IMG/VR virus record: IMGVR_UViG_3300032675_000001
Coordinates: 62,001-126,000 of that record
Strand: one strand, 5' to 3'
DNA length: 64,000 nucleotides
Shown in pieces: positions 23,167 through 55,501 of this stretch (positions within the stretch are counted from its first letter, which is position 1; each line of letters starts with the position of its first letter). The notes beneath the pieces are model-generated. The model was not told where the DNA came from, ran no database searches, and worked only from the letters and a program-made list of their open reading frames with translations. A program made the position numbers and the translations under genes.

Positions 23167-26100
23167 TTAAAGTTGCTCAAAACGCTCACGAAGCCATGCC
23201 CATTCGTAACTTAGCTTCAGCTTATCAAACTCACCGTTTACATCGTCATAGTATTCATCAGCGTCTAATGCACCCTTGATACTATATTCCGAGAACTCCC
23301 CTTGACCCTTGTTTAACCATGCTTCCAGCCTTTCTCGCGAAATGTCAGTATCATCAGCCTTTAGCTTCAACACTTCACGAAATGCCGTTCTCCACGTGGA
23401 GAATGGATCGGTATTGTACTGTGCAATACCTGATAGCAGTGGCACTACTTCATGTTCATCATCCAACGTAAAGTCAAGCCCATTTCCTACATTAGCTAAT
23501 GTAAGTTTCTTATTGTAACAAATGAGGCCCTGGTGGCCGTATATCAAACCATTTACTGGATTTTTGGCATGGAAAATATAATGCTTCGGAACCTGCATTC
23601 TATCTGGTTGCCAGTTGAAGTCAAACTTTAAACTGACTTTCAGCTTAGCAAATACAGTAAAGCACCATGGAGTGTCACTTGCCTCAACGGCGGCATGATA
23701 CGCGGCTACACGACCATTTACACCATCAACTCTAACAACACGATTCTTCAAGTTTTTGGTTGCTTGAAGTAGATGTTCCCAGTTTTCTTCTGCACCAGTT
23801 TCACCATTGCTCAAATATACAATGTCCAGTGGCCTTGACATCGCAAGTTTAGGTGCACGTTTGATGTAAGGATAGTCATACAGTTCCTTCTTAACGTGAT
23901 CCTTTACTTCCTTGGGAACAGTGATTCGGGTTGCGCCCGTGCTGGTGATAATGATATTCTTGTTCTCTGGTGCCCACAAGCACATAGGCTCAACATCTTG
24001 AACATTGACGCTAGCATTATCTTCCGTAATGATGGTAGCATATGGAAAACCATCAACCTTTTTAATGGCATTAACATGCGTATCATCGCTTGTAACGATG
24101 ATTGGCTCCGGAAGTCTATTGGTCTTGATGGTCCCATTGTAGTTTACCTTATGGTAATCTTCCAACACTTGCATATCGTCAATGATTTCACGAGTCTTGT
24201 TTACGTCAATAAAAAATGTATCGCCAAACTTAAGCTTACCGCTCGGGAAGACATGAAGATGATCACGAGCAAATGGATCAACCGTATATGAGAAATCAAA
24301 GTTGGAATAATCACATACGCTACTGCATATCCAAAGATAATGCTCTTTCTTCTGATGCTGCCTAGAGATAATATTTCTCAACGTGTTAAGATAGCTTTCG
24401 TCATACGGAATAGTGGTTACATGTTTTCCGCTTGCTTTGCTTTTTAATAGTTCAACTACCTTTTCCGTTTCTTTATTACCATGATCAATAACCACAATGT
24501 CATGGACACACTGTGTTGCAGTTGCACGAATGTTCTTGACAAAGTTGAGGTTACTTAGATGCTCAATGATCTTAATCCACTTGGTATCTTCGCCAAATGT
24601 CTCACGGTTAACCAAGAATGTGCTACCCCAATGTGACCACTGAGTTCCGAACACATGGACCATTTTCATCTGCCATGGGTTAGGATAATATTCAAAGTCA
24701 AAATTGGTGTAATCCAGTTCTGAGTTTAGTACCCAAAACAGATCGGTAGTAGATCGGTTGGAACACCGATTTATAGTATCAACCCAAGAGTTAAGATAAC
24801 GTGTCTTTTGTATGTTAGGGTACTTTGCCTTTAACTCGTCAAATCTTGCAAGAGACTCTGGGTTGCCCTTATCAACATAGAACATATCAGACTTTTTGAA
24901 TAACTTAAACAATGTTTTGTCATCAAGCTTTTCATCAACTACCCAATTGATTTCTCTGTGGCCCTTTAACCACATATTGGCATTGATCAAGTATGTCTGT
25001 GTCAACTCACTGTCAGATGATCCAAATGCATGAACATACTCTGCTTGTTCAATGGTCGGTCTCCATGAGAAATCAAAATCAGTGTAATCAAGATCAGAAT
25101 TTAGTGCCCAAAAAATCTCACCATGGTGTTCTTCAACAAGATCACTCAGAGTGGTCTTAACGTAATACCGAGGGTAATCAGAAACCACATTCTCATCAAT
25201 ACTAAGCCATTCCATTTTAACGATTTCACCGTTTGTATTTGGCGAAACATATCGTGGACCATCTTCTGGATTTTCAATGGTTCCAAACTGATAGATATAT
25301 GGAGGAGACAACTCATCAGGATGCCATGAAAAGTCAAACGTGTCAACATTTATTCCATCAGGAATGACCCAGTTTTCTTTTGATGGAAGACGCATTGCCG
25401 TTGGATTCCCAACATAAAAGTTATCTGTTGCGCCCGGAACAATATACATTGGACCACCGGTTTTCTGATGCTGAGTACCGAAGATGTAGATATATGGATC
25501 ATTGGTATCATCAGGATGCCATGAATAATCAAAATCTCCGATTACTGTTGGATCGGTAATGGTCCATTTAGACTTGTCTGGTTTACGAATGGCTTTAATG
25601 ATACGAGTATCAATATACTTTAACGGAGAACTTTCTGTTGCACCCGGAGCAATATATCTTGGACCGCCTGTCTTTTGCCACTGAGTTCCGAACTGATAGA
25701 TATATGGCTGATCGTCCAAATATGGATGCCAAGAGAAATCAAATGCATCAACATCAATCTCATCGGGATTGTATTCCCAGTTGTCTCTATTAGGAAGCAC
25801 TTTGGCAGTTTGACATTCTTCATACTTGACTGCGACACCACCCGGAACAGTATATGTAGGACCACCAGTCAATGCCCACTGTGTAGGGAACTGATAGATA
25901 TAGGGTGGTGCAGTATCATCAGGATGCCAAGAAAAGTCAAAACCTTCCATGTCCACATTATCCGGAATGGTCCAGTTTTTCATGCTTGGATGACGAATGG
26001 CTTTCACATCATCAACATATTTTACTTCAGTGGCATTAGGCATTACATAACGTGGACCGCCTGTCTTCTGCCACTGAGTTCCAAACTGATAGATATATTT

Positions 26101-28297: not shown

Positions 28298-29776
28298 TTA
28301 AGAGCAAACTTTGACACCGTATAGCAACTCGAAACGATCCGCATCGGCGCGACCATTTACCATAGGTTCGCCACGAATGTTTAATGATGTGTTGAGGAGC
28401 ATAGGACAACCTGTCTCCTCATACCAACGCTCTAGCAGTCTTCTGATTCCTGATCCATCATTCGGAACGCTCTGAACACGGCTAGTCCCGTCAGCATGAA
28501 CGATAGCAGGGAATAGGTCAGGATGCCTACAAGGAGCGACGACTTGCATATACCTACTGTTATTCCAGCCGTAAGGCATATCAAAATAGTCAGACAAATG
28601 CTCCTCCAAAATGACTGGAGCAAACGGTCTGAACTTTTGTCTGCGCTTGATTTCATTTACTTTGTCCTTAATCTCTGGTCCTCTAGGATCGGCAAGTAGA
28701 GAACGATTCCCCAATGCTCTTGGTCCGAACTCTGCTCTTCCACTTGCTACTCCTACAATCTTGTGTGTATACAACTCTTTTACGATATTGTCAACAGGAT
28801 AATCACCTTTGATTTCATGACCGAGGAATGCATCCTTCCATGCTAATCTTTTACCATATCCAAGAGCGGCTGCACCAAGAGAGTTTCCTGCATCACCGGG
28901 ATTTGGCATGATCCATATGTTATTAAAGAATGCACCAAGTTTACGATTGGCAGAACAGTTCAATGCAACGCCACCGCCAAACACAAGATTGCGACTCTTC
29001 GCAAAGATTCGAGCTTTAATCATGACTGTAGAAATCAACGATTCAGTGAGAACCTGAGTTGATGCTGCAATGTCCATCTCATTCGCATCTTTACCCAAAT
29101 ATTCGTCTTGTAATCCTGTGTGAAGATTAACGGCAAAATCTAGGGTTGATCTATCCTCTATCAAATCTTCAAGCTTGTTAACATGAATTGGATTACCATA
29201 TGCAGCCATTCCCATAAGGATATACTCTTCATCTAATGGACGCAATCCTACATAGGCAGTCATGGCAGAATACATCAATCCTATTGAATCTGGATATTTC
29301 TTGCCCCACAGACGTTTATATACTGCTCGTCCATTTTTGTCATATGATGCATCCCATATAGACATAGTATCAAGTTCACCAATAGCATCAATGATGACTA
29401 CCGTAGCATTATCATACGGGCTAGTTTGAAATCCAGCAGCAGCATGTGACAGGTGATGGCTGTGAGTACTCAGGGTAGTAAAATCAAACCGATCATAGAT
29501 ATCATGACCCATGATCTTGGAAATGCTTAGAGGACCAATCGGCTGTTTAGCCTTGAACTGCCTGATAGCTTTTAGCCACGGCTTTTCATAGTAGTGAAGT
29601 TCATACTCACCATTGGTATATTTTAGAGCATCATCCACCAATGCATGACATAGATTGGCATCATGTTTATTCTTACTGTAACGCTCACTGTGCCCTGCAA
29701 ACTTGATTTCACCATGATCATCCACAACAGTTATGGCAGCATCATGGAATCCGCAACTAATACCAATATAGTTCAT
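28298..29776 (-). CDS. Carbamoyltransferase (NodU/CmcH family)
   Basis: HDAA, HHLSHA, DAIGE, GGVALNC, GRAEFGPRALGNRS, FRPFAP, HADGTSRVQ and LLNTSLN motifs. Confidence 0.95.
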   Translation of the reverse strand: MNYIGISCGFHDAAITVVDDHGEIKFAGHSERYSKNKHDANLCHALVDDALKYTNGEYELHYYEKPWLKAIRQFKAKQPIGPLSISKIMGHDIYDRFDFTTLSTHSHHLSHAAAGFQTSPYDNATVVIIDAIGELDTMSIWDASYDKNGRAVYKRLWGKKYPDSIGLMYSAMTAYVGLRPLDEEYILMGMAAYGNPIHVNKLEDLIEDRSTLDFAVNLHTGLQDEYLGKDANEMDIAASTQVLTESLISTVMIKARIFAKSRNLVFGGGVALNCSANRKLGAFFNNIWIMPNPGDAGNSLGAAALGYGKRLAWKDAFLGHEIKGDYPVDNIVKELYTHKIVGVASGRAEFGPRALGNRSLLADPRGPEIKDKVNEIKRRQKFRPFAPVILEEHLSDYFDMPYGWNNSRYMQVVAPCRHPDLFPAIVHADGTSRVQSVPNDGSGIRRLLERWYEETGCPMLLNTSLNIRGEPMVNGRADADRFELLYGVKVCS

Positions 29777-29792
29777 ACAACATATCACCCGA

Positions 29793-29828: not shown

Positions 29829-31052
29829 ATGAATAAATCCTTATGCCCATATCCTTTTATACATTCACATGTTAGCGCAACATATGAAAGAAAGCTTTGC
29901 TGTGTCGCAAATAGAAGTATAACGGAGTTGCACAAAACTACCGATGAGTACTGGAACTCAGATTATATCAAAAAAACTAGACTTGATATGATATCCGGTA
30001 TTCCAATACCTGACTGCAGCTTTTGTTATGATCATGAAAACAATGGCGTAAAATCACTTAGACAAACTCTTAATGAACAGTTTCCCATACAGCATTTAGT
30101 TGATCAGACCAAAGAAGATGGATCATTGGAAGTTCCGCCATCCTTTTTTGACTATCGTTCCACGACATGTAATCTGCATTGCACTACCTGTGACCACAAT
30201 CATAGTTCTAAATATGCAAAAATTTCCAATAAGCTATTGGGTAAAGAAACGATCCATAAAGTTGACATTGCCTATGAAAACAGCTTGGGAGAAGAAATCA
30301 TCACTGGACTGAGGAACAAAACGGTTAATACCATCTATTGGGCAGGCGGCGAACCAATGATAATGAAAATGCATTGGGATGTGATTGGCGAAATGGAAAA
30401 GTTATATGATGATGCCGAATATTGCTCCTACATAAAGAGCATAAAGCTATACTATAACACGAATATGACCAAGTTATACTGGAAGGGGCGTCTAATACCA
30501 GAAATACTATCCAAGTTTGATGTTACGTTATGGGCCAGTATAGATGGAGTAGAAGAAACGTTTGAGTACTGTAGAGACGGAGCAAGCTGGGAAACGGTCA
30601 AGAACAACTGGCTAATATATAAAAAATACGTTCCAAAGACTTGGGTTACATCCGTTCTATCTGCCCCAGTATTGATGGATATAGATCGCTTTCTTAGCTT
30701 TTTTGAAGCGACTGATTCCACAACCGACTTTTTCAATCACCAGTATGTGCCAAATGCGTTCTTGAACTTGCTGGATATCAGGCAGTACCCATCGGAAATA
30801 TTCAACGATATCATTGACAATGCCATAGCCAGAGTTGAGAAGTCTCCTTTAGGTGGCAAAGAATACACGCTATCTATTCTAAGAAAGTATAAAGCAGAAA
30901 ACCAACACATTGACTCAGTTGGTTATTCCGAAATAAAAAAACAAATCATTCAAAGAGACAAGTTTCTAATATCCGGATTATCATTTGAGCAATTACTTGA
31001 ACAGATTAATCCTGACGCTCACCGATGGTATAAGTCTATAACAGTTGATTAG
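29829..31052 (+). CDS. Radical SAM protein with N-terminal Twitch/SPASM-like Cys cluster
   Basis: CPYPF..H...CC, C..CY, CNLHCTTC, AGGEP and SIDG motifs. Confidence 0.9.
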   Translation: MNKSLCPYPFIHSHVSATYERKLCCVANRSITELHKTTDEYWNSDYIKKTRLDMISGIPIPDCSFCYDHENNGVKSLRQTLNEQFPIQHLVDQTKEDGSLEVPPSFFDYRSTTCNLHCTTCDHNHSSKYAKISNKLLGKETIHKVDIAYENSLGEEIITGLRNKTVNTIYWAGGEPMIMKMHWDVIGEMEKLYDDAEYCSYIKSIKLYYNTNMTKLYWKGRLIPEILSKFDVTLWASIDGVEETFEYCRDGASWETVKNNWLIYKKYVPKTWVTSVLSAPVLMDIDRFLSFFEATDSTTDFFNHQYVPNAFLNLLDIRQYPSEIFNDIIDNAIARVEKSPLGGKEYTLSILRKYKAENQHIDSVGYSEIKKQIIQRDKFLISGLSFEQLLEQINPDAHRWYKSITVD

Positions 31053-31809: not shown

Positions 31810-31813
31810 TCTA

Positions 31814-46387: not shown

Positions 46388-46446
46388 TAACTTTCCCTTA
46401 TAAGACTATATTATATAGCACGATAAAAGGGAGTGCCAATGTTTTA

Positions 46447-46644: not shown

Positions 46645-46690
46645 AAAATTTCGCGCTAATCTACTTAGGTGTGTAAGTCATAAAAATCAG

Positions 46691-47855: not shown

Positions 47856-47858
47856 TAG

Positions 47859-48047
47859 TTATCCCCACCTCAACTTAAACCATATTGCATCTTCTTCGCT
47901 CTGAAACCGTATGCCTTCTCTACCGTCTATACTACTTCCAACAGTCCATCGTTGTGGTTCCGGCAACGGTGGGTTTGGCATCTTTTCATCTAACCAGTCG
48001 CCAGCTTCTACTAACACTTTTAAGGGGACTTCAATATCAATACTCAC
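47859..48047 (-). CDS. F-x-L-R-W-S family protein
   Basis: GTGA-coupled start; ends FQSEEDAIWFKLRWG. Confidence 0.75.
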   Translation of the reverse strand: MSIDIEVPLKVLVEAGDWLDEKMPNPPLPEPQRWTVGSSIDGREGIRFQSEEDAIWFKLRWG

Positions 48048-48403
48048 GACCACCTCAACATAAACCAAGAAACATCCTTCTCATTCTTGAGAAAGACATA
48101 GTATACTCCCGTATACCAATCGCCCTGTTTTAAGTTCTGTTCGCACCATTCACGTATTACGTAATAGTCCTGTGGATCAATCTCAGAATACCATCCTCCG
48201 TCTCGTTCTTCTACCCACTGATTCTTGTCAAGAATGATACCAAGATCATCGGTCCAGCGCGACCAATGCCACGCTGGATTGCCACGTTCGTAGCGAAACT
48301 TTGGCTTGATCCTTTCTGGTGAAACTATATGCCATGCAGCATTCAGTTTTCTAGTTTTAGCAGTCACTGTTGTCTTTATAATATCAAACTTAATATCAGT
48401 CAT
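48044..48403 (-). CDS. F-x-L-R-W-S family protein
   Basis: WCEQN; ends NEKDVSWFMLRWS. Confidence 0.8.
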   Translation of the reverse strand: MTDIKFDIIKTTVTAKTRKLNAAWHIVSPERIKPKFRYERGNPAWHWSRWTDDLGIILDKNQWVEERDGGWYSEIDPQDYYVIREWCEQNLKQGDWYTGVYYVFLKNEKDVSWFMLRWS

Positions 48404-48618
48404 GTTTCCCTCAAGATAAACCAAACATAATCTTCTTCACGATCAAAAACAATGTGTACTTGACCTTCCCGAATCGTGATCTTTTGATCATACGTATCGT
48501 TCCAATGACATACCCATGCACGGTAAAAAACCCCCTCCGTATTAATAATCTTGTCGAACCTATTACGGAACCATTCAGGTTGCTGATTATGATCCTTCGG
48601 GACTTTGTAGTAATACAT
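48400..48618 (-). CDS. F-x-L-R-W-S family protein
   Basis: TAATG-coupled; ends FDREEDYVWFILRET. Confidence 0.75.
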   Translation of the reverse strand: MYYYKVPKDHNQQPEWFRNRFDKIINTEGVFYRAWVCHWNDTYDQKITIREGQVHIVFDREEDYVWFILRET

Positions 48619-48935
48619 TATGACCACCTCAATGTCAAATAGACCCAAGCCTTTTCAGCATCAGCATATCGTTTGAATATCATAGAACGATGCCCATAGT
48701 CTTCTCCACCAAACGATTTCATGATTGCCAGTGCATCATTTAGTACCTCAGTAAAATCAATGCTAAATTTAACAGCAATAACCCACTTGTTCTTGTGGCC
48801 ACCTGTCTTGCGTTGCACCCTCTTACGATAGAGCATAAAATGATTGTTTTGTAGCTCTACTGGTCTATAAATGTCAAGCGTCACATTCTTCAACAGACGG
48901 GAAAGCATTTCTTGCCCTGAAATAGTTTTAGTCAT
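48618..48935 (-). CDS. F-x-L-R-W-S family protein
   Basis: ATGA-coupled; ends DAEKAWVYLTLRWS. Confidence 0.75.
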   Translation of the reverse strand: MTKTISGQEMLSRLLKNVTLDIYRPVELQNNHFMLYRKRVQRKTGGHKNKWVIAVKFSIDFTEVLNDALAIMKSFGGEDYGHRSMIFKRYADAEKAWVYLTLRWS

Positions 48936-49213
48936 GACCACCTCAACAGAAACAAAATCATGTCGCGTTCATCGGTGAACTCGTAATAGTCATCCCAGTT
49001 GTTGTATGTCGCATTGTATTTTGATGCCATATCTGCGTTCCACTTAACCCAATGCATATATACACTACGACTGTCAGTTGGAGCAATGGCTTGATGCTCT
49101 TTGGAGATGTTATAAAACCATTGCTTCCGCACCGTGCGGCTGGCATCATCATGGACATATAGACGCAGATTATCCCTTGTTACATGGGATTCATTAGGTT
49201 CACTTCTTGACAT
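48932..49213 (-). CDS. F-x-L-R-W-S family protein
   Basis: Ends FTDERDMILFLLRWS. Confidence 0.75.
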   Translation of the reverse strand: MSRSEPNESHVTRDNLRLYVHDDASRTVRKQWFYNISKEHQAIAPTDSRSVYMHWVKWNADMASKYNATYNNWDDYYEFTDERDMILFLLRWS

Positions 49214-50577
49214 AAGCGGTAGAAATCCAACATCTCAGGGTACACGGTTAACAAGTCCGTCTCACGACGATCATCAATCTCATTGAACCAGTTGTAGAAA
49301 TCTCTACGTCCTTCAATGAGCTTCTGATCGCTATACACCGTTTCCGCCATATAGTCAACAACTCTTTTGAACTTTTCATACTCGATAGTAGAGAAAGCAT
49401 CGGCGCGGTCATCATCAAGGTTGTCTTCCATAAACTTCAATGACTCGCACATATATGGCATGAACTCATCCTTGGGAAGAATGTTCATGTCATACTGAAT
49501 CGGATCACGAAGATATGGAGTGTCAAAACGAATGATGTGCTGCTTGCGCTCTTCATCCCATCCATACTGCTTACGCCATTCAAGAAACTTCTCTAGAAGA
49601 CTCTTGAAGCTTGTCACACTGAAAATATTAAATGTGATCATGAATGTGATAGGAGACTGTGCCTTGCTTACATAGGTGTGGAAGTTCTTTTCCCACACAT
49701 CTAGGTCTAGTCCAGTGCGAATATACTCCGCACGTTCTCCCCATGTATCCATTGAAGTGAACAGCTTGAATGCTCTGATTTTACCTTCATCCTGTAGCTT
49801 TCGGACTTTGGTTGCAAGGCGATCAATCAGAATATTCTTCGTGCCTAGGTTTGAGTTAATGTTTAGTTCCAACCATGGCATTGGGTCTTCATCAATCTTG
49901 TCTAGCAGTTGCCATGTAGACTTGTGAAGAGTTGGTTCTCCGCCTGTGACACGCATGATGTTTAATGTTTGTCTCAGTTCAGGCCACCATTCCCAGAATG
50001 CATCAACATATGGGTTTTCTTCTTCACGTTGATAAAGTTTCATCCAGTCAATATCGCAGCGATGGTTCTTGACACTTGTTACCGGACCAAAATCTTCAAT
50101 CTCTTTGAAGTAGCGAGTTGAGTATTTTGGATGACAGTATCCGCATTTGAAATTGCATTCGTTGCCAAAGTTTATTTCCAAGTATTCCGGATTGATATTC
50201 TGATTCCAAGCACCCTTTGCTGTCTGTTCGTAACGTTCTTCTGTGAAGATAGAACTGTTGCGAATGTGTCGGTCAGAGATATAATCCTTACCCATTGCTT
50301 CCACGTTCCAGCAGTATTGACACCCTTTTGGCTTTTCTCCATTGAGCATCTGCTGACGCTCTAACTTCTTTTCAGTTGTATTGTGGAGAGCCGATGGATT
50401 ATCTTTTAGTTCACTCAATGGAATCTTGTGAGGAGCCGGGTGATAGCATGAATGCGTTTCCCCTGTCTGCAAGTAGATAGTCGTATGCATCCATTTTGCT
50501 AAACAGAAAGTCTTAGTAGAGTCAACGTCTATATAATCACGTATGCGTTTAATTCTGTCAACTTCGGATTCTTGCAT
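49180..50577 (-). CDS. Radical SAM protein with N-terminal Twitch-like cluster
   Basis: FCLAKW...SCYHP, C.YCW, CNFKCGYC and TGGEP motifs. Start moved to MQESEV. Confidence 0.92.
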   Translation of the reverse strand: MQESEVDRIKRIRDYIDVDSTKTFCLAKWMHTTIYLQTGETHSCYHPAPHKIPLSELKDNPSALHNTTEKKLERQQMLNGEKPKGCQYCWNVEAMGKDYISDRHIRNSSIFTEERYEQTAKGAWNQNINPEYLEINFGNECNFKCGYCHPKYSTRYFKEIEDFGPVTSVKNHRCDIDWMKLYQREEENPYVDAFWEWWPELRQTLNIMRVTGGEPTLHKSTWQLLDKIDEDPMPWLELNINSNLGTKNILIDRLATKVRKLQDEGKIRAFKLFTSMDTWGERAEYIRTGLDLDVWEKNFHTYVSKAQSPITFMITFNIFSVTSFKSLLEKFLEWRKQYGWDEERKQHIIRFDTPYLRDPIQYDMNILPKDEFMPYMCESLKFMEDNLDDDRADAFSTIEYEKFKRVVDYMAETVYSDQKLIEGRRDFYNWFNEIDDRRETDLLTVYPEMLDFYRLCQEVNLMNPM

Positions 50578-50594
50578 GGGCTTCTTTTCTGATG

Positions 50595-50662
50595 ATAAAT
50601 AGCTGTGAGTCGCGGAACAGACATTCCCACTCACTCTAACGCTATTAAGGAGCATCAGCATG
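50595..50662 (+). promoter_or_regulatory. Late promoter + conserved structured leader, copy A
   Basis: ATAAATA gct GTGAGT cgc GGAA cagaca TTCC c ACTCAC tctaac GCT attaagg AGC atcagc ATG. Confidence 0.8.
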
Positions 50663-51175
50663 ACTATTTACACTGGCAATAACTATCGGAAAATTTATAA
50701 ACAACACCATGGTCCTATCCCAAAAGATGAAAACGGGCGACGATACGACATTCATCATATTGATGGTGATCATACCAACAATCTCCCGGACAATCTGATT
50801 GCCATTCCAATTCAAGAACATTATGATATTCATTATGCCCAAAAAGATTATGGTGCATGTTTTCTCATAGCACCACGCCTAAAAATGTCAGCAAACGTAC
50901 TATCAGAACTAGCATCAAAACGCAATAAACAACAACTTGAAAATGGGACGCACGTTTTTCAAAGTGGTATGCAGACAAAAAACAATCTGATACGAAGTCA
51001 AAACGGAACTCATCCTTTTCTTGGCGGAAATGTTCAGCGTGATATGCACAGAAAAAATTTAGAAAACGGTACACATTTCGGTAAAATGGTGTGGACATGT
51101 CCACACTGCGGCAAGAACGGTAGGAATAAATCTAACTATACCAGATATCATGGCAGTAACTGTAAATCGCTGTAG
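50660..51175 (+). CDS. HNH homing endonuclease
   Basis: DIHHIDGDHTNNLPDNL...EHYDIH, NGTH repeats and a C-terminal CPHC..RYHG..C. Confidence 0.9.
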   Translation: MTIYTGNNYRKIYKQHHGPIPKDENGRRYDIHHIDGDHTNNLPDNLIAIPIQEHYDIHYAQKDYGACFLIAPRLKMSANVLSELASKRNKQQLENGTHVFQSGMQTKNNLIRSQNGTHPFLGGNVQRDMHRKNLENGTHFGKMVWTCPHCGKNGRNKSNYTRYHGSNCKSL

Positions 51176-51178: not shown

Positions 51179-52126
51179 TCACCAGCCTTCTATCTTTCTA
51201 ATGACATCCATCTCTTTTACCAATGGACCCACGTTGTATTTGTCTGCGTTGTAGTGACGCTTGAAGAACTTGCTTTGTTCTTCTAAAAACATGCACATTG
51301 GTAGACCTAACTTATCTGCTAAGATATCTCCTACTATTTCCGCAGCGATGGTTGGATGCTTGTCTTTGTGAGATTCCCAAAGATTGTGAAAAGTATCAAA
51401 GTCGGATACTTCACGATAATCCCAGTCAGTGAGCATAGTCATCCATGTACCTAATCTTGCACCGTAAATAGCCCAGATACCATTCTCCACATCGGCACCA
51501 ACATTGTGCCAAATAGTGAGATTGTTCAGATTGCGTGATGCTACTCGCTCCTTAAAATCATCTATACTAGGCTTTGCACCACGATCCAGCACCATCTTGA
51601 CGCCTTCACGAAATCCTGCTCTCCACGCCTGAAAGGGAGTATAGTTAGGATATGTAGTAGAGTAGCAGTTCCACAAAGCCCAGTATAGACTATTGGTAGA
51701 ATCCATACAGAAGTCTACCGATGTTGAATCACTTCCATCAGTGTTTTCGTGGGTTTGCATAGTTGAAACATATGATTTTGTCCATGACGATATTCCTCCA
51801 TTTCCATAACGGAGACCATTGATATGATTAATGGCCTTCCACCTAAATTGTGCTAGTTTATACGAAGGGTCCAAATCAGTGAAGTCCAATTGGACATTAA
51901 AAAACTCCTCATGTGGCAAGTTATCCCCATCTATTACGAAAAAACGTTCGGTGTCGCTAGCTTCTCCTGCTGCTTTGTGGGCAGCGTCAGAACCCTTCAC
52001 ACCATCAACCCTCTTGGCCCATGGGCACATATTTTTTATCTTAAGCCAAAATTCTTCCTTAGATGGTTCATCATATGAAAGATAAATTACGTCACAATCT
52101 GCAACGTCTAAAATGTCTATACTCAT
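51179..52126 (-). CDS. Glycosyltransferase-A-like protein
   Basis: D.IYLSYDE, RVDGVKG..AAH.AA, VIDGD (DxD), NGLRYGNGG and AWRAGFREG motifs. Confidence 0.65.
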   Translation of the reverse strand: MSIDILDVADCDVIYLSYDEPSKEEFWLKIKNMCPWAKRVDGVKGSDAAHKAAGEASDTERFFVIDGDNLPHEEFFNVQLDFTDLDPSYKLAQFRWKAINHINGLRYGNGGISSWTKSYVSTMQTHENTDGSDSTSVDFCMDSTNSLYWALWNCYSTTYPNYTPFQAWRAGFREGVKMVLDRGAKPSIDDFKERVASRNLNNLTIWHNVGADVENGIWAIYGARLGTWMTMLTDWDYREVSDFDTFHNLWESHKDKHPTIAAEIVGDILADKLGLPMCMFLEEQSKFFKRHYNADKYNVGPLVKEMDVIRKIEGW

Positions 52127-52713
52127 GTAATATTCCTATTCTTACAACGAACGCCGTGCCATCTACTATACATCGGACTACTTACTGTCATGGAGCAATG
52201 CTCACATGTTTTCATTATTTTAGACGGATGCGTACCATCTTTTAATTGTTTTTTCGTTACGGCTCCACCTACTAAATTGTGCCTGTTCTCTTCAATTCTT
52301 TTTAAATTTTTCTGTTTAGCGTTTTCTGAGTTTTGCCACGGGTGCTTCCCTTCCATCACCTGTTTTAACGCTTTTTCTCGTTGGTGGTCACTATTCTGCC
52401 ATGGGTGAATGCCTCTTGCAACTTGACTTGCTGCATTCCTTTTTGCCAACTCTGACTTCTTTTCCTGAGATATATCCATACGCTTTGACAGGCTAAGACA
52501 TGCTGCCCAGTCTCCTTGAGAATAATGAATGTCATAATGTTCTTGTATGGATACTGCAATTAAATTTTCCGGAGAATTATTATGACTGTTTCCATCACGG
52601 TGATGAATATCATATGACCTTCCGTAATCATCCAGTGGAATAGGGCCATGAAACTTTTCGTATAATCGTCTGTAAAAGGTTGAAGATGTTCGTTTTCTAG
52701 AGTAAATAGACAT
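52123..52713 (-). CDS. HNH homing endonuclease, paralog of 50660..51175
   Basis: HGPIP.D..GRSYDIHHRDGNSHNNSPENL...QEHYDIHY, G.HPW repeats and CEHC..RWHG..C. Start moved to MSIYSR. Confidence 0.9.
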   Translation of the reverse strand: MSIYSRKRTSSTFYRRLYEKFHGPIPLDDYGRSYDIHHRDGNSHNNSPENLIAVSIQEHYDIHYSQGDWAACLSLSKRMDISQEKKSELAKRNAASQVARGIHPWQNSDHQREKALKQVMEGKHPWQNSENAKQKNLKRIEENRHNLVGGAVTKKQLKDGTHPSKIMKTCEHCSMTVSSPMYSRWHGVRCKNRNIT

Positions 52714-52779
52714 ACTGATGCTCTCCCAAGCGTTAGAGTAGTTGGGGATTCCAGTCCCGCGAACTACATCTTTATTTAT
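52711..52779 (-). promoter_or_regulatory. Late promoter + conserved structured leader, copy C
   Basis: ATAAATA aagat GTAGTT cgc GGGA ctggaa TCCC c AACTAC tctaac GCTT ggga GAGC atcagt ATG. Confidence 0.8.
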
Positions 52780-52799
52780 GTCTGACATCAACTATTTCA

Positions 52800-53126
52800 T
52801 CAGAGTGCATAAGTCTTTAAATCCCAATATTGTCCATCGTCATCAGTAAGAATACTGATGTCTTCTTTTTCACACAGTGCGCCTTTTGTATCTGGTACCA
52901 AGCGTGATATAACTGCGTTTGTGTTTATCTTTATCAACTTGCCATCAACTACACGAACGTCTGGACGGCCTTCTGCGTATGTTTGAGCATCAATGACAAT
53001 GTAGTTACCATCGTGCTTTTCACAAGAGTATGAGACTACACAACCCCTTTCATCATAGTAGAGCCTGAACTCTGGCTTTACTATGATAGGTGCTTCCCAG
53101 ATGATTACCTCTTCGTTATCCATCAT
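52800..53126 (-). CDS. Hypothetical protein
   Basis: Coupled ORF. Confidence 0.7.
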   Translation of the reverse strand: MMDNEEVIIWEAPIIVKPEFRLYYDERGCVVSYSCEKHDGNYIVIDAQTYAEGRPDVRVVDGKLIKINTNAVISRLVPDTKGALCEKEDISILTDDDGQYWDLKTYAL

Positions 53127-53383
53127 TTCAACTCAAAATAATCTGCGATGACCTCAGATGGAAGCATATGTTCCCATTTGTCGCTCCCGTTGAGCGGCAA
53201 ATCAGCGACTCTCATGCATTCTCTGACAACCAGTTCAGCATACATTTCCAGAAACTTGGTAGTATAACCGATGCTACTGTTAACCCTGAATATAGAGTCG
53301 TAACCAGCAGATTCGGCACTTTGCGACCATCGCATTGCTCCCTCTAGGATTTCTTGACATGCGTGGCGAGAAATATTTGACAT
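53123..53383 (-). CDS. Hypothetical protein
   Basis: Coupled ORF; AELVVREC motif. Confidence 0.65.
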   Translation of the reverse strand: MSNISRHACQEILEGAMRWSQSAESAGYDSIFRVNSSIGYTTKFLEMYAELVVRECMRVADLPLNGSDKWEHMLPSEVIADYFELK

Positions 53384-54135
53384 TAAGTGTTTTCCTGTAT
53401 TTTGTTGGCGAATGATTTAATATGGTAGTGAATGGGATAGCGTTGTGGTATCGTATTGATTCTAAAAGTGTGTGGGAGAATCTCATAAACAAAAGTGTCA
53501 GTCCAGTCTTCTGTCGGCAGACCATTGATGAACTGTTTCATATGTACCATGGACAGAAACTCTGAATGAGGCAATGTGGTGTTCTCAACTCCTAACATAT
53601 GACAAGCGAGTGCATATACCCAATCTGTGGTAGCAGTTTCATCAAGGTTGCACTTTAATGTACTACGAAACTCTCCCCAGTTTTCAAAGATGGTTTTCAC
53701 TATCTCAAAAAACTGTTTGGCAAAATCTGATTTACGAAAATAAGTTATTCCATTGTATACGTCTGGAAGATCATTGTCAACAATAAACTTGCGATAAGCC
53801 TTGATATCGGATACATCTTGCTTGAAGTTACGAATGTGTGTAGACACAACCAGATCGCGGTCCTTTAGCGCATCCCACCAGTATTCAATAGTTTGTGGCA
53901 CATACATGTCCGCTTCAAGCTTGATAGTATATTCATATGGACTGGCTTCATATATCTGCCAATCGTTTTGCAGCTTCCAGTTAGTATCAGGAGCCTGATC
54001 ACCATATGGAAGCATATCAGTGGTAATAATAGTCACGTTGGCGTCTGGCATTACTCGCTTGATGCTTGCTTCTAATACTTCAGCACACCTGACGTAATCA
54101 TCGCCCTGTGCCATTATGACAAAACCCTTATCCAT
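53383..54135 (-). CDS. Nucleotide-diphospho-sugar transferase-like (GT-A) protein
   Basis: YEASPYEYTIKLEADM. Paralog of 54384..55196. Confidence 0.65.
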   Translation of the reverse strand: MDKGFVIMAQGDDYVRCAEVLEASIKRVMPDANVTIITTDMLPYGDQAPDTNWKLQNDWQIYEASPYEYTIKLEADMYVPQTIEYWWDALKDRDLVVSTHIRNFKQDVSDIKAYRKFIVDNDLPDVYNGITYFRKSDFAKQFFEIVKTIFENWGEFRSTLKCNLDETATTDWVYALACHMLGVENTTLPHSEFLSMVHMKQFINGLPTEDWTDTFVYEILPHTFRINTIPQRYPIHYHIKSFANKIQENT

Positions 54136-54397
54136 ATTTTAACCTATGCCACATTTCATCTTCGCTATTGTTGAACTTGATAGATACCCCGTTCATAGGC
54201 CATTTATCACCACAGACTTTCCAAACTAGATCATAGTCTCCCGGAAACACTTCCTTAAATGCCTTCATCACTGCCGATGTGTTAATGTTTAATAGTTGAT
54301 TGCTACTAAAATGTCCGGGAAGAGCATCAAATGGTAATGCGTTTCCACTAATGAAGGGCAAGCCATCTACCCACATTATTCTATCAGTCATGCCCAT
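54128..54397 (-). CDS. Divergent F-x-L-R-W-S family protein
   Basis: Ends FNNSEDEMWHRLKYG. Confidence 0.6.
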   Translation of the reverse strand: MGMTDRIMWVDGLPFISGNALPFDALPGHFSSNQLLNINTSAVMKAFKEVFPGDYDLVWKVCGDKWPMNGVSIKFNNSEDEMWHRLKYG

Positions 54398-55196
54398 TTA
54401 TCATCTCCACGAACAAATCTTTATTCATGACATGGAAGTCCATATCCTTTATTGTGATATACTCTTTGCGAATCTTACCACGTTGCCAGTTGTCAAACAT
54501 CACGGTATATTCTGTGTTGAACTCTTCACCATTGTTGCGATAAACTTGCGTATTTTTACCAACATGTAGCAAATCCCACGGAATAAAATTATTGGAATCA
54601 GAAAAATGACCGTCAGCAATGCGGAGAGCAAGAGTAAGAGCATAATCGTTACGATAAACACCCCCAATGAAGTTATGAATGTTGGCGTAGTGTTCATAGT
54701 TTTTTTGTACCATTTCTAAGCATTGGAATATCTGCTCTGCTCTTTTTGTTTTTCTAAACATCACCACTGTTGCCCATAGTGTGTCATAACTGTATACTGA
54801 CAAAGACTCTTGTGGAACCCCCGGATGCATGAGGAAACTAGTTCTATTGTGACAGCAGAAATCATAACCAAGATCAAACGTTTTTAGTAGCTTGTCCGAG
54901 TTTACAATGTAATCAACGTCAAGAAGAATGGTTTCATCATATGGACTTAATTCATATGCTAGATATCTGCCCTTATTAATCCACATGCCCCAATCACGGA
55001 AGTTATTTTTATCCGGTTCAATCTTGATGATGTGATCCCATTCATAGGTTTCTTCATAAGGATATGATTCGCTGTCAGTAACGATTGTAACTGGCAATCC
55101 CAAGAAATGATTTACACGTTTGGCAGTATGAAGTGCCATGTCGTAGTAGTTATACTTGGGGGAGTTAAAGGCAAATAGGATTACACCGCGAGTCAT
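54384..55196 (-). CDS. Nucleotide-diphospho-sugar transferase-like (GT-A) protein
   Basis: YELSPYDETILLDVDY (DxD), RND and HVMNK motifs. Confidence 0.7.
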   Translation of the reverse strand: MTRGVILFAFNSPKYNYYDMALHTAKRVNHFLGLPVTIVTDSESYPYEETYEWDHIIKIEPDKNNFRDWGMWINKGRYLAYELSPYDETILLDVDYIVNSDKLLKTFDLGYDFCCHNRTSFLMHPGVPQESLSVYSYDTLWATVVMFRKTKRAEQIFQCLEMVQKNYEHYANIHNFIGGVYRNDYALTLALRIADGHFSDSNNFIPWDLLHVGKNTQVYRNNGEEFNTEYTVMFDNWQRGKIRKEYITIKDMDFHVMNKDLFVEMINGHD

Positions 55197-55501
55197 CTCT
55201 TGCCTTCTAGTTCAGACCATTCTGCATACCATTCTTTCATGACTTCCCAATATGTATCGGTAAGCTTGTCAAGTAACTCTTGACGGACAACTTTTACGGG
55301 ATTATCAAATGTATCGATAAGGATTATTTCTTCGTTTCCAGAAACAGAAAGAAATGCAATGGTTTGTTGATCGGCTCGCCATAATCCACCCTGTTCAGCA
55401 ACAAGCAGTTTGCTGTTGTATTTCTCTGCGAGATACGCTTTTGCTGAATTGTGATTAAATCTTGCCTTGGCATCGGCAATTAAAGTCTTTGTATCCATCA
55501 T
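55193..55501 (-). CDS. Hypothetical protein
   Basis: AGGAG RBS; late-promoter motif at 55514..55520. Confidence 0.7.
   Translation of the reverse strand: MMDTKTLIADAKARFNHNSAKAYLAEKYNSKLLVAEQGGLWRADQQTIAFLSVSGNEEIILIDTFDNPVKVVRQELLDKLTDTYWEVMKEWYAEWSELEGKR

What the first reader, a model, noticed from the sequence alone, without database searches (positions are those of the whole stretch)
23167..55501. ~32-kb phage-encoded glycan synthesis and tailoring island adjoining the tail-fibre genes
Seen: a nucleotide-sugar dehydrogenase, a GME-like epimerase (plus epimerase and DegT at 3233..5234), four TET/SEK GT-B-like paralogs, four GT-A-like genes, a carbamoyltransferase, sulfotransferase-like and SGNH-like genes, and six radical SAM enzymes. 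Several have late-promoter motifs. The block follows fibre genes that are very rich in S/T/N and N-x-S/T. Inference: a self-contained pathway that builds a carbamoylated/methylated/sulfated glycan, most plausibly on the virion. DNA hypermodification or host-surface remodelling are alternatives; no base hydroxymethylase is visible in this window.
Basis: partly seen in the sequence, partly recalled or inferred. Interest (0 to 1): 0.75.

Follow-up and report, generated by a model that had tools for sequence, protein, structure and literature searches.

The report
Phage sugar-building genes beside tail fibres
A giant T4-like lake-water phage carries a conserved ~32-kb block of soluble sugar-making, sugar-transferring and radical-SAM enzymes directly behind its tail-fibre genes; it most likely builds an unusual glycan inside the infected cell, perhaps on the fibres, but the target has not been shown.

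Summary
Window 23167-55501 encodes a GDP-mannose 3,5-epimerase, a nucleotide-sugar dehydrogenase and a NodU/TobZ-type carbamoyltransferase. It also encodes six radical SAM enzymes with intact CX3CX2C motifs: four N-terminal-twitch paralogs (NF033640), one B12-binding, one small. There are four paralogs of a virus-only family that AlphaFold models as GT-B, and three GT-A-like genes (one modelled; two weakly GT8/glycogenin-like). A 1645-aa protein has 13 repeats of ~66 aa and degenerate GT-A modules. The sulfotransferase-like and SGNH-like calls are weak.

The genome is a complete 360.7-kb T4-like phage from lake metagenomes. No island protein has a membrane segment. The genome has no sugar nucleotidyltransferase, no second ThyA-family gene and no TET/JBP. 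In 80 related viral contigs, the order fibre genes, 102-aa gene, GT8b, GT8a, GT-A, twitch rSAM is kept in 73-80, often behind a late-promoter-like CTAAATAC.

Best reading: a cytoplasmic, carrier-independent glycan pathway coupled to the fibre module and fed by host GDP-mannose. Glycan synthesis is well supported; the virion target is only inferred. The closest known kind is the glycosyltransferase- and rSAM-bearing "host recognition cluster" of pelagi- and cyanomyophages. I rate this a new variant of that kind.

The parts
55546..63907 (-). Tail-fibre/spike-like genes (62084-63907, 61302-61922, 58724-61285, 57762-58715, 56512-57729, 55546-56499) immediately upstream of the enzyme block
   Evidence: 26-41% S/T/N. 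Peptidase_G2 intramolecular-chaperone domain and a PHROG 'virion structural protein' hit in 56512-57729. 56512-57729 and 58724-61285 share their first 117 aa at 57%. Homologs lie upstream of the GT-A gene in 74-78 of 80 related loci.
55193..55501 (-). Conserved 102-aa gene that heads the enzyme block, with the late-promoter-like motif CTAAATAC 11 nt upstream
   Evidence: Present in 79 of 80 related loci. CTAAATAC lies about 12 nt upstream in 27 of 78 loci, and any NTAAATAN in 37 of 78, against 3.6% of random 80-nt windows. The motif family is enriched upstream of genes genome-wide and in the head module.
54384..55196 (-). GT8-like GT-A glycosyltransferase b (LDVDY motif)
   Evidence: Present in 80 of 80 related loci. 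The profile of this family has glycogenin-1 as its 17 best PDB matches, but only at E 0.017. No Pfam hit.
53383..54135 (-). GT8-like GT-A glycosyltransferase a (LEADMY motif)
   Evidence: Present in 80 of 80 related loci. phrog_1903, E 5e-11. Same weak glycogenin match.
52800..53126 (-). Conserved 108-aa gene of unknown function
   Evidence: Present in 73 of 80 related loci. No family hit.
52123..52791 (-). HNH homing endonuclease (an insertion, not part of the pathway)
   Evidence: HNH_3, E 1.3e-9. Found in only 2 of 80 related loci.
51179..52126 (-). GT-A (GT2-like) glycosyltransferase with a DGD motif; a highly conserved core gene
   Evidence: AlphaFold model with pLDDT 92.9. The best PDB fold match is the PBCV-1 A64R capsid glycosyltransferase, followed by ArnC, TarP, RmlT and BcsA; AlphaFold DB matches are GT2 clusters. 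D66 and D68 are nearly invariant. Homologs are about 80% identical across more than 8000 metagenome proteins. The family has 1185 representatives at 50% clustering.
50660..51175 (+). HNH homing endonuclease (an insertion)
   Evidence: HNH_3, E 7e-10. Paralog of 52123-52791. Found in 2 of 80 related loci.
49180..50661 (-). N-terminal-twitch radical SAM enzyme, paralog 4
   Evidence: NF033640, 314.6 bits against a cut-off of 170. CNFKCGYC motif. Lies directly downstream of the GT-A gene in 75 of 80 loci.
46388..49179 (-). Run of small ORFs (65-156 aa) not conserved in relatives
   Evidence: No homologs in L001-L005 or in the 80 viral loci. No family hits.
45155..46387 (-). N-terminal-twitch radical SAM enzyme, paralog 3
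   Evidence: NF033640, 377.9 bits. 75-88% identical to homologs across the clade. Four invariant N-terminal Cys plus CX3CX2C.
43094..44368 (-). N-terminal-twitch radical SAM enzyme, paralog 2
   Evidence: NF033640, 362 bits. 30% identical to paralog 3.
41815..42792 (-). Small radical SAM enzyme (MoaA/viperin-like core only)
   Evidence: Radical_SAM, 34.8 bits. CNFRCSYC motif. 68-70% identical in relatives.
40485..41858 (-). GT-B-like paralog 4
   Evidence: blastp to the other three paralogs. Only 32-57% identical in syntenic relatives.
39508..40488 (-). GDP-mannose 3,5-epimerase
   Evidence: PDB 2c59, E 1.5e-92 over residues 4-320; the next family matches at 6.6e-26. 77-78% identical in relatives.
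38444..39550 (-). GT-B-like paralog 3 (the most divergent)
   Evidence: blastp E 1e-6 to 1e-7 to the others.
37326..38456 (-). GT-B-like paralog 2
   Evidence: 36% identical to paralog 1.
36014..37237 (-). Nucleotide-sugar 6-dehydrogenase (UGDH/GMD family, divergent)
   Evidence: Pfam UDPG_MGDP_dh N-terminal and central domains. PDB UGDH at 1.5e-18 and GDP-mannose dehydrogenase at 1e-13. 77-79% identical in relatives.
34902..35987 (-). GT-B-like paralog 1 (the one modelled)
   Evidence: AlphaFold model with pLDDT 89.2. All Foldseek and VIA-align matches are GT-B glycosyltransferases with Z up to 10.7. No Pfam family hit for any of 38 family members. More than 1272 metagenome homologs, with Atlas clusters 94-100% viral, some fused to an MTS methyltransferase or an epimerase.
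32675..34891 (-). B12-binding radical SAM enzyme (class B, methyltransferase-like)
   Evidence: Both the B12-binding and Radical_SAM domains score over the Pfam cut-offs. The nearest NCBIfam families are C- and P-methyltransferases, all below their cut-offs. 74-81% identical in relatives.
31902..32678 (-). SGNH-like/DUF6071-like protein (weak call)
   Evidence: DUF6071, E 0.0015, 18.7 bits against a cut-off of 27. Conserved at 50-67% next to the carbamoyltransferase in relatives.
31036..31878 (-). Sulfotransferase-like protein (weak call)
   Evidence: Sulfotransfer_1, E 0.037, over residues 38-99, which contain GVPRSGT. Not found in L001-L005.
29829..31052 (+). N-terminal-twitch radical SAM enzyme, paralog 1 (opposite strand)
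   Evidence: NF033640, 248.5 bits. CNLHCTTC motif.
28298..29788 (-). NodU/TobZ-type carbamoyltransferase
   Evidence: Carbam_trans_N at 129 bits and Carbam_trans_C at 164 bits. 60-70% identical in relatives and 44% in Ralstonia phage RsoM2USA.
23167..28104 (-). 1645-aa protein: 13 tandem ~66-aa 'FDFSWHPD..PYIYxFG..GGP' repeats, then 3-4 degenerate GT-A-like modules
   Evidence: Repeat anchors lie 65-70 residues apart. Residues 1426-1584 are 32% identical to the GT-A enzyme, but TVFAKL stands where the enzyme has VIDGDN. No Pfam or PDB match. A giant homolog follows the carbamoyltransferase in L003 and L004. A predicted contact with the GT-A enzyme has weak support only: 0.54 against a best control of 0.02.
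3233..5234 (-). Separate DegT-type sugar aminotransferase and SDR epimerase/dehydratase pair
   Evidence: Pfam hits. Best PDB matches are glutamine-scyllo-inositol transaminase and QdtB for the first, and UDP-glucose 4-epimerase or 4,6-dehydratase for the second.

Best explanation
The block is a phage-encoded, wholly cytoplasmic pathway that assembles and chemically tailors an unusual oligo- or polysaccharide without lipid-carrier or membrane steps. It is genetically coupled to the tail-fibre module.

Proposed steps:
1. Host GDP-mannose (and probably UDP-hexoses) is converted by the phage GME to GDP-L-galactose or GDP-L-gulose. A divergent 6-dehydrogenase makes a uronic acid. The separate DegT/SDR pair makes an amino sugar.
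2. Three conserved GT-A enzymes (two GT8-like, one GT2-like) start the glycan. Four fast-evolving GT-B-like paralogs extend it.
3. The glycan is tailored by O-carbamoylation and by B12-dependent radical methylation. Four twitch-type radical SAM enzymes and one small one add further tailoring whose chemistry is unknown; epimerisation, oxidation or dehydration are candidates.
4. The 1645-aa repeat protein, with its catalytically degenerate GT-A modules, acts as a scaffold or as a glycan- or acceptor-binding partner.

Shown: the family and fold assignments, solubility, synteny and conservation pattern. Inferred: the order of steps, the sugar identities beyond the GME product, the radical SAM chemistry, and the acceptor. 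I take the acceptor to be the adjacent S/T/N-rich fibre proteins, made late in infection.
For: Enzyme identities. GT-B and GT-A folds from confident models. The GT-B-like family is fused to epimerase or methyltransferase domains in other phages.

No hydrophobic segment occurs in any of the 34 island proteins.

The whole architecture, from the rSAM genes to the carbamoyltransferase and giant protein, recurs in 106-, 352- and 531-kb contigs. Sugar and rSAM enzymes are 70-82% identical, while the GT-B paralogs are only 30-57%.

In 80 IMG/VR loci the order fibre genes, 102-aa gene, GT8b, GT8a, 108-aa gene, GT-A, twitch rSAM is kept in 73-80. The same order is seen in marine contigs L018, L021 and L024 at 30-50% identity.

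A late-promoter-like CTAAATAC heads the block here and in 27 of 78 relatives. The same motif class precedes head genes.

In the only cultured phage with homologs, RsoM2USA, the GT-A genes ORF348-350 lie 9-11 ORFs from the tail-sheath gene ORF359, whose product was confirmed in virions by mass spectrometry.

The best PDB fold match of the GT-A enzyme is the chlorovirus capsid-glycosylating A64R.
Against: No tool shows the acceptor. Synteny within one viral lineage may reflect descent rather than function.

The late motif sits only 11-12 nt from the annotated start codon and is absent from half of the relatives.

The N-x-S/T excess in the fibres is mostly explained by composition and internal repeats.

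Soluble glycosyltransferases can also act on host undecaprenyl-linked intermediates. The published reading of similar clusters is host O-chain modification (PMC7029224).

Twitch/SPASM radical SAM enzymes more often modify peptides than sugars.

The metatranscriptome contigs that matched come from relatives and may be DNA carry-over.
Confidence: 0.45

Rival explanations
1. Host-envelope remodelling. The soluble phage glycosyltransferases and tailoring enzymes act on the host's own lipid-linked O-antigen, capsule or LPS intermediates during infection. This changes the cell surface, for example to block superinfection or to stop progeny re-adsorbing to lysed cells. Export relies on host Wzx/Wzy or ABC machinery.
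For: This is the published interpretation of the tail-fibre-linked 'host recognition cluster' of pelagimyophages and cyanomyophages, which carries GT8 glycosyltransferases, UDP-glucose dehydrogenase and radical SAM cassettes (PMC7029224). Many O-antigen glycosyltransferases are peripheral proteins without membrane segments, so one search does not exclude it. The fast-evolving GT-B paralogs resemble serotype-determining transferases.
Against: The island has no initiating phosphoglycosyltransferase, flippase, polymerase or ligase, and no membrane protein at all. Both the GT-B-like and the GT-A families are 94-100% viral in the Atlas clusters. The GT-A and rSAM core is about 80% conserved over thousands of phage variants, which is odd for enzymes that must fit differing host glycans. 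The block appears to be late, behind a late-type motif shared with structural genes.
Confidence: 0.25
2. Two functions side by side. The glycosyltransferases and sugar enzymes build a glycan, while the twitch-type radical SAM paralogs modify proteins rather than sugars. Fibre or other virion proteins could be epimerised, cross-linked or oxidised.
For: Most characterised SPASM/twitch enzymes act on peptides or proteins; the weak NCBIfam side-hits are to anSME, PapB, CcpM and YydG. In a complete Bdellovibrionales chromosome, three tandem twitch rSAM genes stand without any recognisable sugar gene nearby.
Against: The small ORFs between the rSAM genes are not conserved, so there is no RiPP-type precursor. 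Twitch rSAM genes directly adjoin the GT-A gene in 75 of 80 loci, and they co-occur with GT-A, GT8-like or carbamoyltransferase genes in distant contigs and in RsoM2USA. BtrN and NeoN are twitch enzymes that act on sugars (my own knowledge).
Confidence: 0.15
3. DNA hypermodification. The transferases glycosylate phage DNA bases, and the other enzymes tailor the attached sugars, to evade host restriction.
For: T4 beta- and alpha-glucosyltransferases are among the best structural matches of the GT-B-like model (Z 10.7 and 9.9). Diverse glycans on viral DNA have been reported in the literature (cited in PMC12619734). A large DNA methylase fusion lies 3 genes downstream.
Against: The genome has a single ThyA-family gene. 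It scores 355 bits, keeps the PCH and FNIAS motifs and sits next to DHFR, so it is a canonical thymidylate synthase. There is no TET/JBP and no credible C5-methylase. The T4 matches do not stand out from about 290 other GT-B chains with Z of 8 or more.
Confidence: 0.07
4. A diffusible glycoside or aminoglycoside-like small molecule is made during infection.
For: The enzyme set echoes aminoglycoside clusters: a DegT whose best match is a scyllo-inositol transaminase, a TobZ-type carbamoyltransferase, a twitch rSAM like BtrN, a B12 rSAM like GenK, and a weak fold match to the BtrM glycosyltransferase.
Against: Seven or eight transferases is far more than such pathways need. There is no cyclitol synthase and no exporter. 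The block is tightly linked to the fibre genes.
Confidence: 0.05

Closest known systems
'Host recognition cluster' of pelagimyophages and cyanomyophages (Zaragoza-Solas et al. 2020, PMC7029224)
   Same: The phage is T4-like, with a gp23 major capsid protein. The region holds tail-fibre genes together with GT8-type glycosyltransferases, a UDP-glucose-dehydrogenase-type gene and radical SAM cassettes. Marine contigs L018, L021 and L024 show the same order of fibre, GT8b, GT8a, GT-A and twitch rSAM.
   Different: This genome is 360 kb, from a lake. The block is much larger: six rSAM genes, GME, a carbamoyltransferase and a 1645-aa repeat protein. Its proximal half is not hypervariable but a strongly conserved core. 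The published reading (host O-chain modification) was not tested either.
Chlorovirus PBCV-1 capsid glycosylation (A64R and partners)
   Same: The glycosyltransferases are virus-encoded, soluble and cytoplasmic, and they build an unusual, methylated glycan on a virion protein without the host's carrier machinery. A64R is the best PDB fold match of the GT-A enzyme.
   Different: The match is weak (E 2e-4, TM 0.28-0.40) and covers only the nucleotide-binding half. PBCV-1 is a eukaryotic virus with no radical SAM enzymes. No glycan has been demonstrated here.
Mycobacteriophage virion O-glycosylation (Freeman et al. 2023, as cited)
   Same: Phage-encoded glycosyltransferases modify capsid or tail proteins in the cytoplasm.
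   Different: That system has only one to a few transferases and no sugar-nucleotide or radical SAM tailoring enzymes. The hosts and phage lineage are unrelated, and no sequence relationship was found.
Cytoplasmic protein glycosylation of beta-helical adhesins (HMW1C/NGT, GtfA-GtfB, SdgB)
   Same: Soluble GT-B enzymes glycosylate S/T/N-rich fibrous proteins before export. These chains are among the fold matches. GtfB is a non-catalytic paralog that partners the active enzyme, as proposed here for the giant protein's dead GT-A domain (weak support).
   Different: The resemblance is at fold level only (Z about 9, as for hundreds of GT-B chains). There is no sequence similarity.
T4 DNA alpha- and beta-glucosyltransferases
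   Same: They are phage GT-B enzymes and the top VIA-align match (Z 10.7).
   Different: They need hydroxymethylcytosine, and no enzyme that could make it is present.

Membership tests
GT-B glycosyltransferase superfamily (four paralogs) | Two Rossmann-like domains facing a cleft | tested here: met
   AlphaFold model of 34902-35987 has pLDDT 89.2 and pTM 0.88. All 50 listed Foldseek PDB matches and the top 28 of 30 Swiss-Prot matches are named glycosyltransferases or lipid-A-disaccharide synthases, which have the GT-B fold by my own knowledge. VIA-align Z is up to 10.7, with 293 chains at Z of 8 or more.
GT-B glycosyltransferase superfamily (four paralogs) | Membership of a described sequence family (Pfam/CAZy) | tested here: not met
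   No glycosyltransferase family is hit by any of 38 members, even at E up to 1. No PDB match by sequence or by profile.
GT10 alpha-1,3-fucosyltransferases | Pfam PF00852 match, and a closer structural match than to other GT-B families | tested here: not met
   No PF00852 hit. The H. pylori FucT, FUT9 and FUT11 chains score Z 9.2-9.8, no better than unrelated GT-B chains. The Atlas feature score to GT10 clusters is only 0.78-0.79. The likeness of the invariant E249-K250 ('SEK') to the GT10 'TEK' motif is from memory and was not tested.
GT-A / GT2-like glycosyltransferases (51179-52126) | Single Rossmann-like nucleotide-binding fold with a DxD motif | tested here: met
   Model pLDDT 92.9. Fold matches are A64R, ArnC, TarP, RmlT and BcsA, plus GT2 clusters in AlphaFold DB. 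D66 and D68 (the DGD motif) are nearly invariant in 47 sequences.
GT-A / GT2-like glycosyltransferases (51179-52126) | Pfam Glycos_transf_2 score over the curated cut-off | tested here: not met
   No hit for the window protein. 8 of 47 relatives hit GT2-type models only weakly, with best E 0.0018-0.019.
GT8 (glycogenin/LgtC-like) for 53383-54135 and 54384-55196 | Significant profile match to GT8 members | tested here: inconclusive
   The 12-sequence profile has glycogenin-1 as its 17 best PDB matches, but at E 0.017-0.039 and over the N-terminal 100 positions only. No structure was modelled.
N-terminal twitch radical SAM (NCBIfam NF033640) | Score over the curated cut-off of 170 bits, a CX3CX2C motif, and an N-terminal Cys cluster | tested here: met
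   The four genes score 248-378 bits. The CX3CX2C motif is present in all four. C16, C35, C76 and C79 are invariant. The family's reaction is not known to me.
GDP-mannose 3,5-epimerase | Full-length similarity that stands clear of other SDR epimerases | tested here: met
   E 1.5e-92 and 314 bits to Arabidopsis GME over 317 residues. The next family (UXS) matches at 6.6e-26. Catalytic residues were not checked one by one.
Class B (B12-binding) radical SAM enzymes | A B12-binding domain followed by a radical SAM domain, both over their Pfam cut-offs | tested here: met
   45.7 and 53.8 bits. CTAKCSFC motif. No NCBIfam equivalog cut-off is reached, so the substrate is unknown.
NodU/TobZ O-carbamoyltransferases | Carbam_trans_N and Carbam_trans_C domains | tested here: met
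   129 and 164 bits. The NodU equivalog cut-off (1000 bits) is not reached, at 123 bits.
Sulfotransferases (31036-31878) | Pfam Sulfotransfer match over the cut-off | tested here: not met
   13.9 bits against a cut-off of 22, E 0.037, covering the PAPS-loop region only.
T4-type DNA glycosylation system | An enzyme that makes a hydroxymethyl-pyrimidine handle (a second ThyA-family hydroxymethylase, or TET/JBP with a C5-methylase) | tested here: not met
   One canonical ThyA only. No TET/JBP. The best C5-methylase hit is 14.9 bits, below the cut-off.
Wzx/Wzy- or ABC-dependent surface-polysaccharide gene cluster | An initiating phosphoglycosyltransferase, flippase or polymerase, i.e. integral membrane proteins | tested here: not met
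   No 19-residue window with mean hydropathy of 1.6 or more occurs in any island protein. No such Pfam family was found.
RiPP gene cluster | A conserved precursor-peptide gene next to the radical SAM maturase | tested here: not met
   The small ORFs at 46.4-49.2 kb have no homologs in syntenic relatives. The twitch rSAM genes are contiguous in L003.
Host recognition cluster of aquatic T4-like myophages | A T4-like phage in which tail-fibre genes are interleaved with glycosyltransferase, LPS-type and rSAM genes in a variable region | tested here: met
   gp23 at 326.7 bits. Gene content as listed under parts. Description in PMC7029224. Variability is met only for the GT-B paralogs and the distal genes, not for the GT-A and rSAM core.
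Virion-glycosylating phage systems | A glycan demonstrated on a virion protein | not testable with these tools
   This needs glycoproteomics or staining. No isolate of this lineage exists.

The most novel reading that the evidence does not exclude
A widespread lineage of freshwater and marine T4-like phages runs a carrier-independent cytoplasmic glycosylation system, comparable to that of chloroviruses. Two virus-only glycosyltransferase families and a pseudo-glycosyltransferase scaffold decorate the tail fibres with a glycan. A family of N-terminal-twitch radical SAM enzymes edits that glycan, which would be radical chemistry on a protein-linked or nascent glycan, not described for any virus.
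Probability: 0.3. Interest if true: 0.85.

Novelty: new variant of a known kind. Interest (0 to 1): 0.6.

Why it matters
If the glycan sits on the fibres, it would be the first virus-encoded glycosylation system in T4-like phages. It would bear on host recognition and on evasion of receptor-mimicking or proteolytic defences in very abundant aquatic phages: the same sequence is held by at least 16 lake-water runs.

Whatever the target, the block defines several families with no assigned reaction:
- A GT-B-fold family with more than 1272 members.
- A GT-A family with 1185 representatives at 50% clustering.
- A 66-aa repeat derived from a glycosyltransferase sub-domain.
- The twitch radical SAM family, here consistently linked to sugar enzymes.

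That linkage gives the rSAM family a testable substrate class. The work also shows that part of what has been called a hypervariable 'host recognition cluster' is in fact a strongly conserved core.

Tried and rejected
- Megablast of 20 kb against 50,697 phage records: no match.
- tblastn of a GT-B paralog and of the repeat region against phage records: no match. Only Ralstonia phage RsoM2USA holds homologs of the GT-A enzyme and of the giant protein's C-terminal domain, and its record and paper annotate them as hypothetical. Six Vibrio phage records and one marine virus record also hold weak twitch rSAM homologs, at 21-26% identity.
- Pfam, PHROGs and NCBIfam on the GT-B paralogs, the giant protein and the small ORFs: nothing.
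- Sequence and profile searches of the PDB for the GT-B family: chance hits only.
- The 'moraphage' paper (PMC12619734) describes a different, smaller lineage.
- Searches for literature on N-terminal twitch enzymes found no functional study.
- Cellular twitch rSAM homologs lie mostly in Bdellovibrionota and Bacteroidota MAGs. Several of those contigs are clearly mis-binned phage, and a true chromosomal locus gave no functional clue.
- Metatranscriptome contigs cover parts of 49180-55100 at 80-90% identity. They come from relatives and cannot prove transcription.
- TATAAATA itself is rare (23 in the genome); the phage uses [AC]TAAATA variants.
- The gene at G000:228883-229611 that co-occurs with the module in four loci looks like a small methyltransferase by eye; I did not follow it up.
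- The predicted complex of the GT-A enzyme with the giant protein's C-terminal domain scored 0.54 against a best control of 0.02. That mark was reached by 51 of 78 solved complexes and 2 of 108 mismatched pairs, but scores of 0.60 or under count as weak. The two chains are paralogs, so this may only reflect a family dimer.

Full report
CONTEXT. The window is bases 62001-126000 of a single 360,683-bp contig with 41% G+C. IMG/VR classes it as a virus with direct terminal repeats, and CheckV rates it complete. It encodes a T4-type major capsid protein (gp23, 326.7 bits) and a gp9/10-like baseplate protein. It is therefore a jumbo T4-like myophage. It has no nucleotide-level relative among 50,697 deposited phage records. 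The same sequence is held in full by at least 16 lake-water metagenome runs. Almost all genes in the window lie on the minus strand.

THE OBSERVATION. Read in the direction of transcription (from 63907 downwards), the genes are:
- Fibre or spike genes with 26-41% S/T/N. One has a Peptidase_G2 intramolecular-chaperone domain. Two share an N-terminal 117 residues.
- A 102-aa gene.
- Two GT8-like genes.
- A 108-aa gene.
- A GT-A gene, flanked by two HNH homing endonucleases.
- A twitch radical SAM gene, then a run of unconserved small ORFs, then two more twitch radical SAM genes.
- A small radical SAM gene.
- GT-B-like paralog 4, GME, GT-B-like paralogs 3 and 2, a nucleotide-sugar dehydrogenase, and GT-B-like paralog 1.
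- A B12-binding radical SAM gene.
- An SGNH-like/DUF6071-like gene and a sulfotransferase-like gene.
- A fourth twitch radical SAM gene, on the plus strand.
- A carbamoyltransferase.
- A 1645-aa protein.

All six radical SAM proteins keep the CX3CX2C motif. The four twitch paralogs score 248-378 bits on NF033640, whose cut-off is 170, and they keep four N-terminal cysteines.

The epimerase is a GDP-mannose 3,5-epimerase beyond reasonable doubt: E 1.5e-92 over its full length, with the next SDR family at 6.6e-26.

The sulfotransferase-like call (E 0.037) and the SGNH-like call (DUF6071, below cut-off) are leads only.

THE TRANSFERASES. The four paralogs hit no Pfam, NCBIfam, PHROG or PDB sequence family. 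They belong to a family with more than 1272 metagenome members, whose Atlas clusters are 94-100% viral. Some members are fused to an MTS methyltransferase or an SDR epimerase.

A confident AlphaFold model (pLDDT 89) matches glycosyltransferases almost exclusively, and I know these to be GT-B: SdgB, TarM, BshA, OtsA, T4 BGT and AGT, GT10 fucosyltransferases, HMW1C/NGT and LpxB. Z reaches 10.7, and no single family stands out.

The 315-aa protein at 51179-52126 models at pLDDT 93 as a GT-A fold. Its best PDB match is the chlorovirus capsid glycosyltransferase A64R, followed by GT2 enzymes. It has a nearly invariant DGD motif. Only 8 of 47 relatives touch GT2 Pfam models, and only weakly.

The two upstream genes give a marginal but consistent profile match to glycogenin, a GT8 enzyme (E 0.017).

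THE GIANT PROTEIN. The 1645-aa protein has 13 tandem repeats of about 66 aa, with the pattern FDFSWHPD..PYIYxFG..GGP. Three larger modules follow, each with a W.LNS(D/E)LDY..FDF pattern. The C-terminal domain is 32% identical to the GT-A enzyme, but the enzyme's VIDGDN is replaced by TVFAKL. By eye, the repeats look like copies of the sub-domain that follows the DxD strand of that enzyme.

The protein has no family, PDB or cultured-phage match except in RsoM2USA. A predicted contact between the GT-A enzyme and this C-terminal domain scored 0.54 against a best control of 0.02. The tool grades this as weak support, and the two chains are paralogs.

WHAT IS CONSERVED. The architecture recurs in 106-, 352- and 531-kb metagenome contigs. 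There the carbamoyltransferase is again followed by a giant protein of 1996-2155 aa.
- GME, the dehydrogenase, the B12 rSAM, the twitch rSAMs and the small rSAM are 68-82% identical in those contigs.
- The four GT-B paralogs are only 28-57% identical.
- The GT-A enzyme and twitch paralog 3 are about 75-88% identical over thousands of variants.

I then examined 80 IMG/VR loci picked by the GT-A gene. The counts are: GT8a and GT8b in 80, the 102-aa gene in 79, the fibre-like genes in 74-78, the 108-aa gene in 73, twitch rSAM genes in 75, and GT-B paralogs in 50. All lie at constant offsets. The HNH genes occur in only 2. The proximal half of the 'island' is therefore a conserved core tied to the fibre module, while the distal half varies. 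Other contigs add a sugar C-methyltransferase, a second B12 rSAM or an extra dehydratase.

EXPRESSION SIGNAL. The 8-mers most enriched upstream of genes are ATAAATAC, CTAAATAC and GATAAATA, which are variants of the T4 late promoter. They precede many head-module genes. In the island, the clear case is CTAAATAC 11 nt before the 102-aa gene. It is conserved at that place in 27 of 78 relatives, and any NTAAATAN occurs in 37 of 78 against a background of 3.6%. GT8b, GT8a and the GT-A gene have no motif of their own. This fits one late transcript that runs from the fibre genes into the enzyme block. The short distance to the start codon leaves room for doubt.

WHERE THE PRODUCT GOES. None of the 34 island proteins has a hydrophobic segment. 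No initiating transferase, flippase or polymerase is present. The genome has no sugar nucleotidyltransferase, so activated sugars must come from the host.

For DNA modification, the usual handles are missing. There is one ThyA-family gene only; it is canonical and sits next to DHFR. There is no TET/JBP and no real C5-methylase.

The N-x-S/T richness of the fibres is mostly explained by composition. Only the repeat-bearing 853-aa fibre exceeds shuffles (z 3.1).

In RsoM2USA, the single cultured phage with homologs, the GT-A genes lie 9-11 ORFs from the tail-sheath gene, whose product was confirmed by mass spectrometry. Its twitch rSAM and carbamoyltransferase genes are clustered elsewhere.

Taken together, these points favour a phage-intrinsic, cytoplasmic acceptor made late. 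The fibres are the obvious candidate. This is inference, not demonstration.

COMPARISON WITH WHAT IS KNOWN. Zaragoza-Solas et al. (PMC7029224) described in pelagimyophages and cyanomyophages a large 'host recognition cluster'. It holds tail fibres, GT8 glycosyltransferases, UDP-glucose dehydrogenase and radical SAM cassettes, and they proposed host O-chain modification. Marine contigs L018, L021 and L024 link that description to this block.

The present case is a larger variant, richer in rSAM genes. It shows that the GT-A and twitch rSAM part is conserved rather than hypervariable.

In mechanism, the nearest analogues are chlorovirus capsid glycosylation, mycobacteriophage virion glycosylation, and cytoplasmic glycosylation of bacterial fibrous adhesins. 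None is a sequence relative.

VERDICT.
- Observation: confirmed.
- Interpretation: partly supported. The glycan pathway is supported. 'Self-contained' and 'sulfated' are not. The virion target is plausible but unproven.
- Novelty: a new variant of a known kind.
- Interest: 0.6.

Noticed in passing
window 16963-17307 (-): A two-piece (permuted) tmRNA of the alphaproteobacterial type. ARAGORN finds it with tag peptide ANDNSTMDIALAA, and Rfam gives RF04321 85.5 bits and RF01849 65.8 bits. It lies between the rubrerythrin-like gene and a probably spurious plus-strand ORF. It may hint at an alphaproteobacterial host, whereas mis-binned relatives sit in Bacteroidota MAGs.
   Followed up: partly
window 10672-13309 (-): A MoxR-type AAA ATPase (12197-13309) and a DUF2201 metallopeptidase-like/VWA protein (10672-12018) lie in a patch of 47.5% G+C, against about 40% elsewhere. 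Long antisense ORFs run on the plus strand.
   Followed up: partly
window 50660-51175 (+) and 52123-52791 (-): Two paralogous HNH homing endonucleases (39% identical) flank the roughly 80%-conserved GT-A gene. They occur in only 2 of 80 related loci, which fits recent homing into a conserved target.
   Followed up: partly
window 5682-6503 (-): A GIY-YIG/I-TevI-like homing endonuclease sits between the DegT/SDR pair and thymidylate synthase. Thymidylate synthase and DHFR are separated by an unknown 333-aa gene.
   Followed up: no
window 13736-15799 (-), 17534-18658 (-), 18961-22807 (-): A likely counter-defence or modification cluster lies just downstream of the island. It holds a 687-aa protein with an ART-PolyVal ADP-ribosyltransferase domain, a P-loop plus GNAT fusion, a DUF559 endonuclease-like protein, an 851-aa protein with an N6/N4 DNA methylase domain only at its N-terminus, and a GNAT.
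   Followed up: no
window 56512-57729 and 58724-61285 (-): Two fibre genes share their first 117 residues at 57% identity but have different distal parts. This looks like alternative fibres on one attachment domain.
   Followed up: no
L087 (Bdellovibrionales chromosome, 2.2 Mb) 7117-11275: Three tandem twitch-type radical SAM genes lie in a bacterial chromosome next to unknown 496- and 470-aa proteins. Among GTDB genomes, cellular homologs of the family are concentrated in Bdellovibrionota and Bacteroidota MAGs.
   Followed up: partly
G000:C1:228883-229611 (-), outside the window: The C-terminal ~184 residues of this ORF call (242 aa as called; from the internal Met at residue 59) carry motifs that look like a class I methyltransferase by eye. 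Homologs lie next to GT-A, giant-C-terminus-like and twitch rSAM genes in four GTDB contigs (L049, L056, L060, L083), although here it is far from the island.
   Followed up: partly
L029 and L075 (contigs of 148 and 183 kb binned as a Haliscomenobacter MAG): Both carry the carbamoyltransferase (62-64% identical), the GT-A gene (59-60%), GT8a and the GT-B paralogs. They are probably a related jumbo phage binned with a Bacteroidota genome.
   Followed up: no
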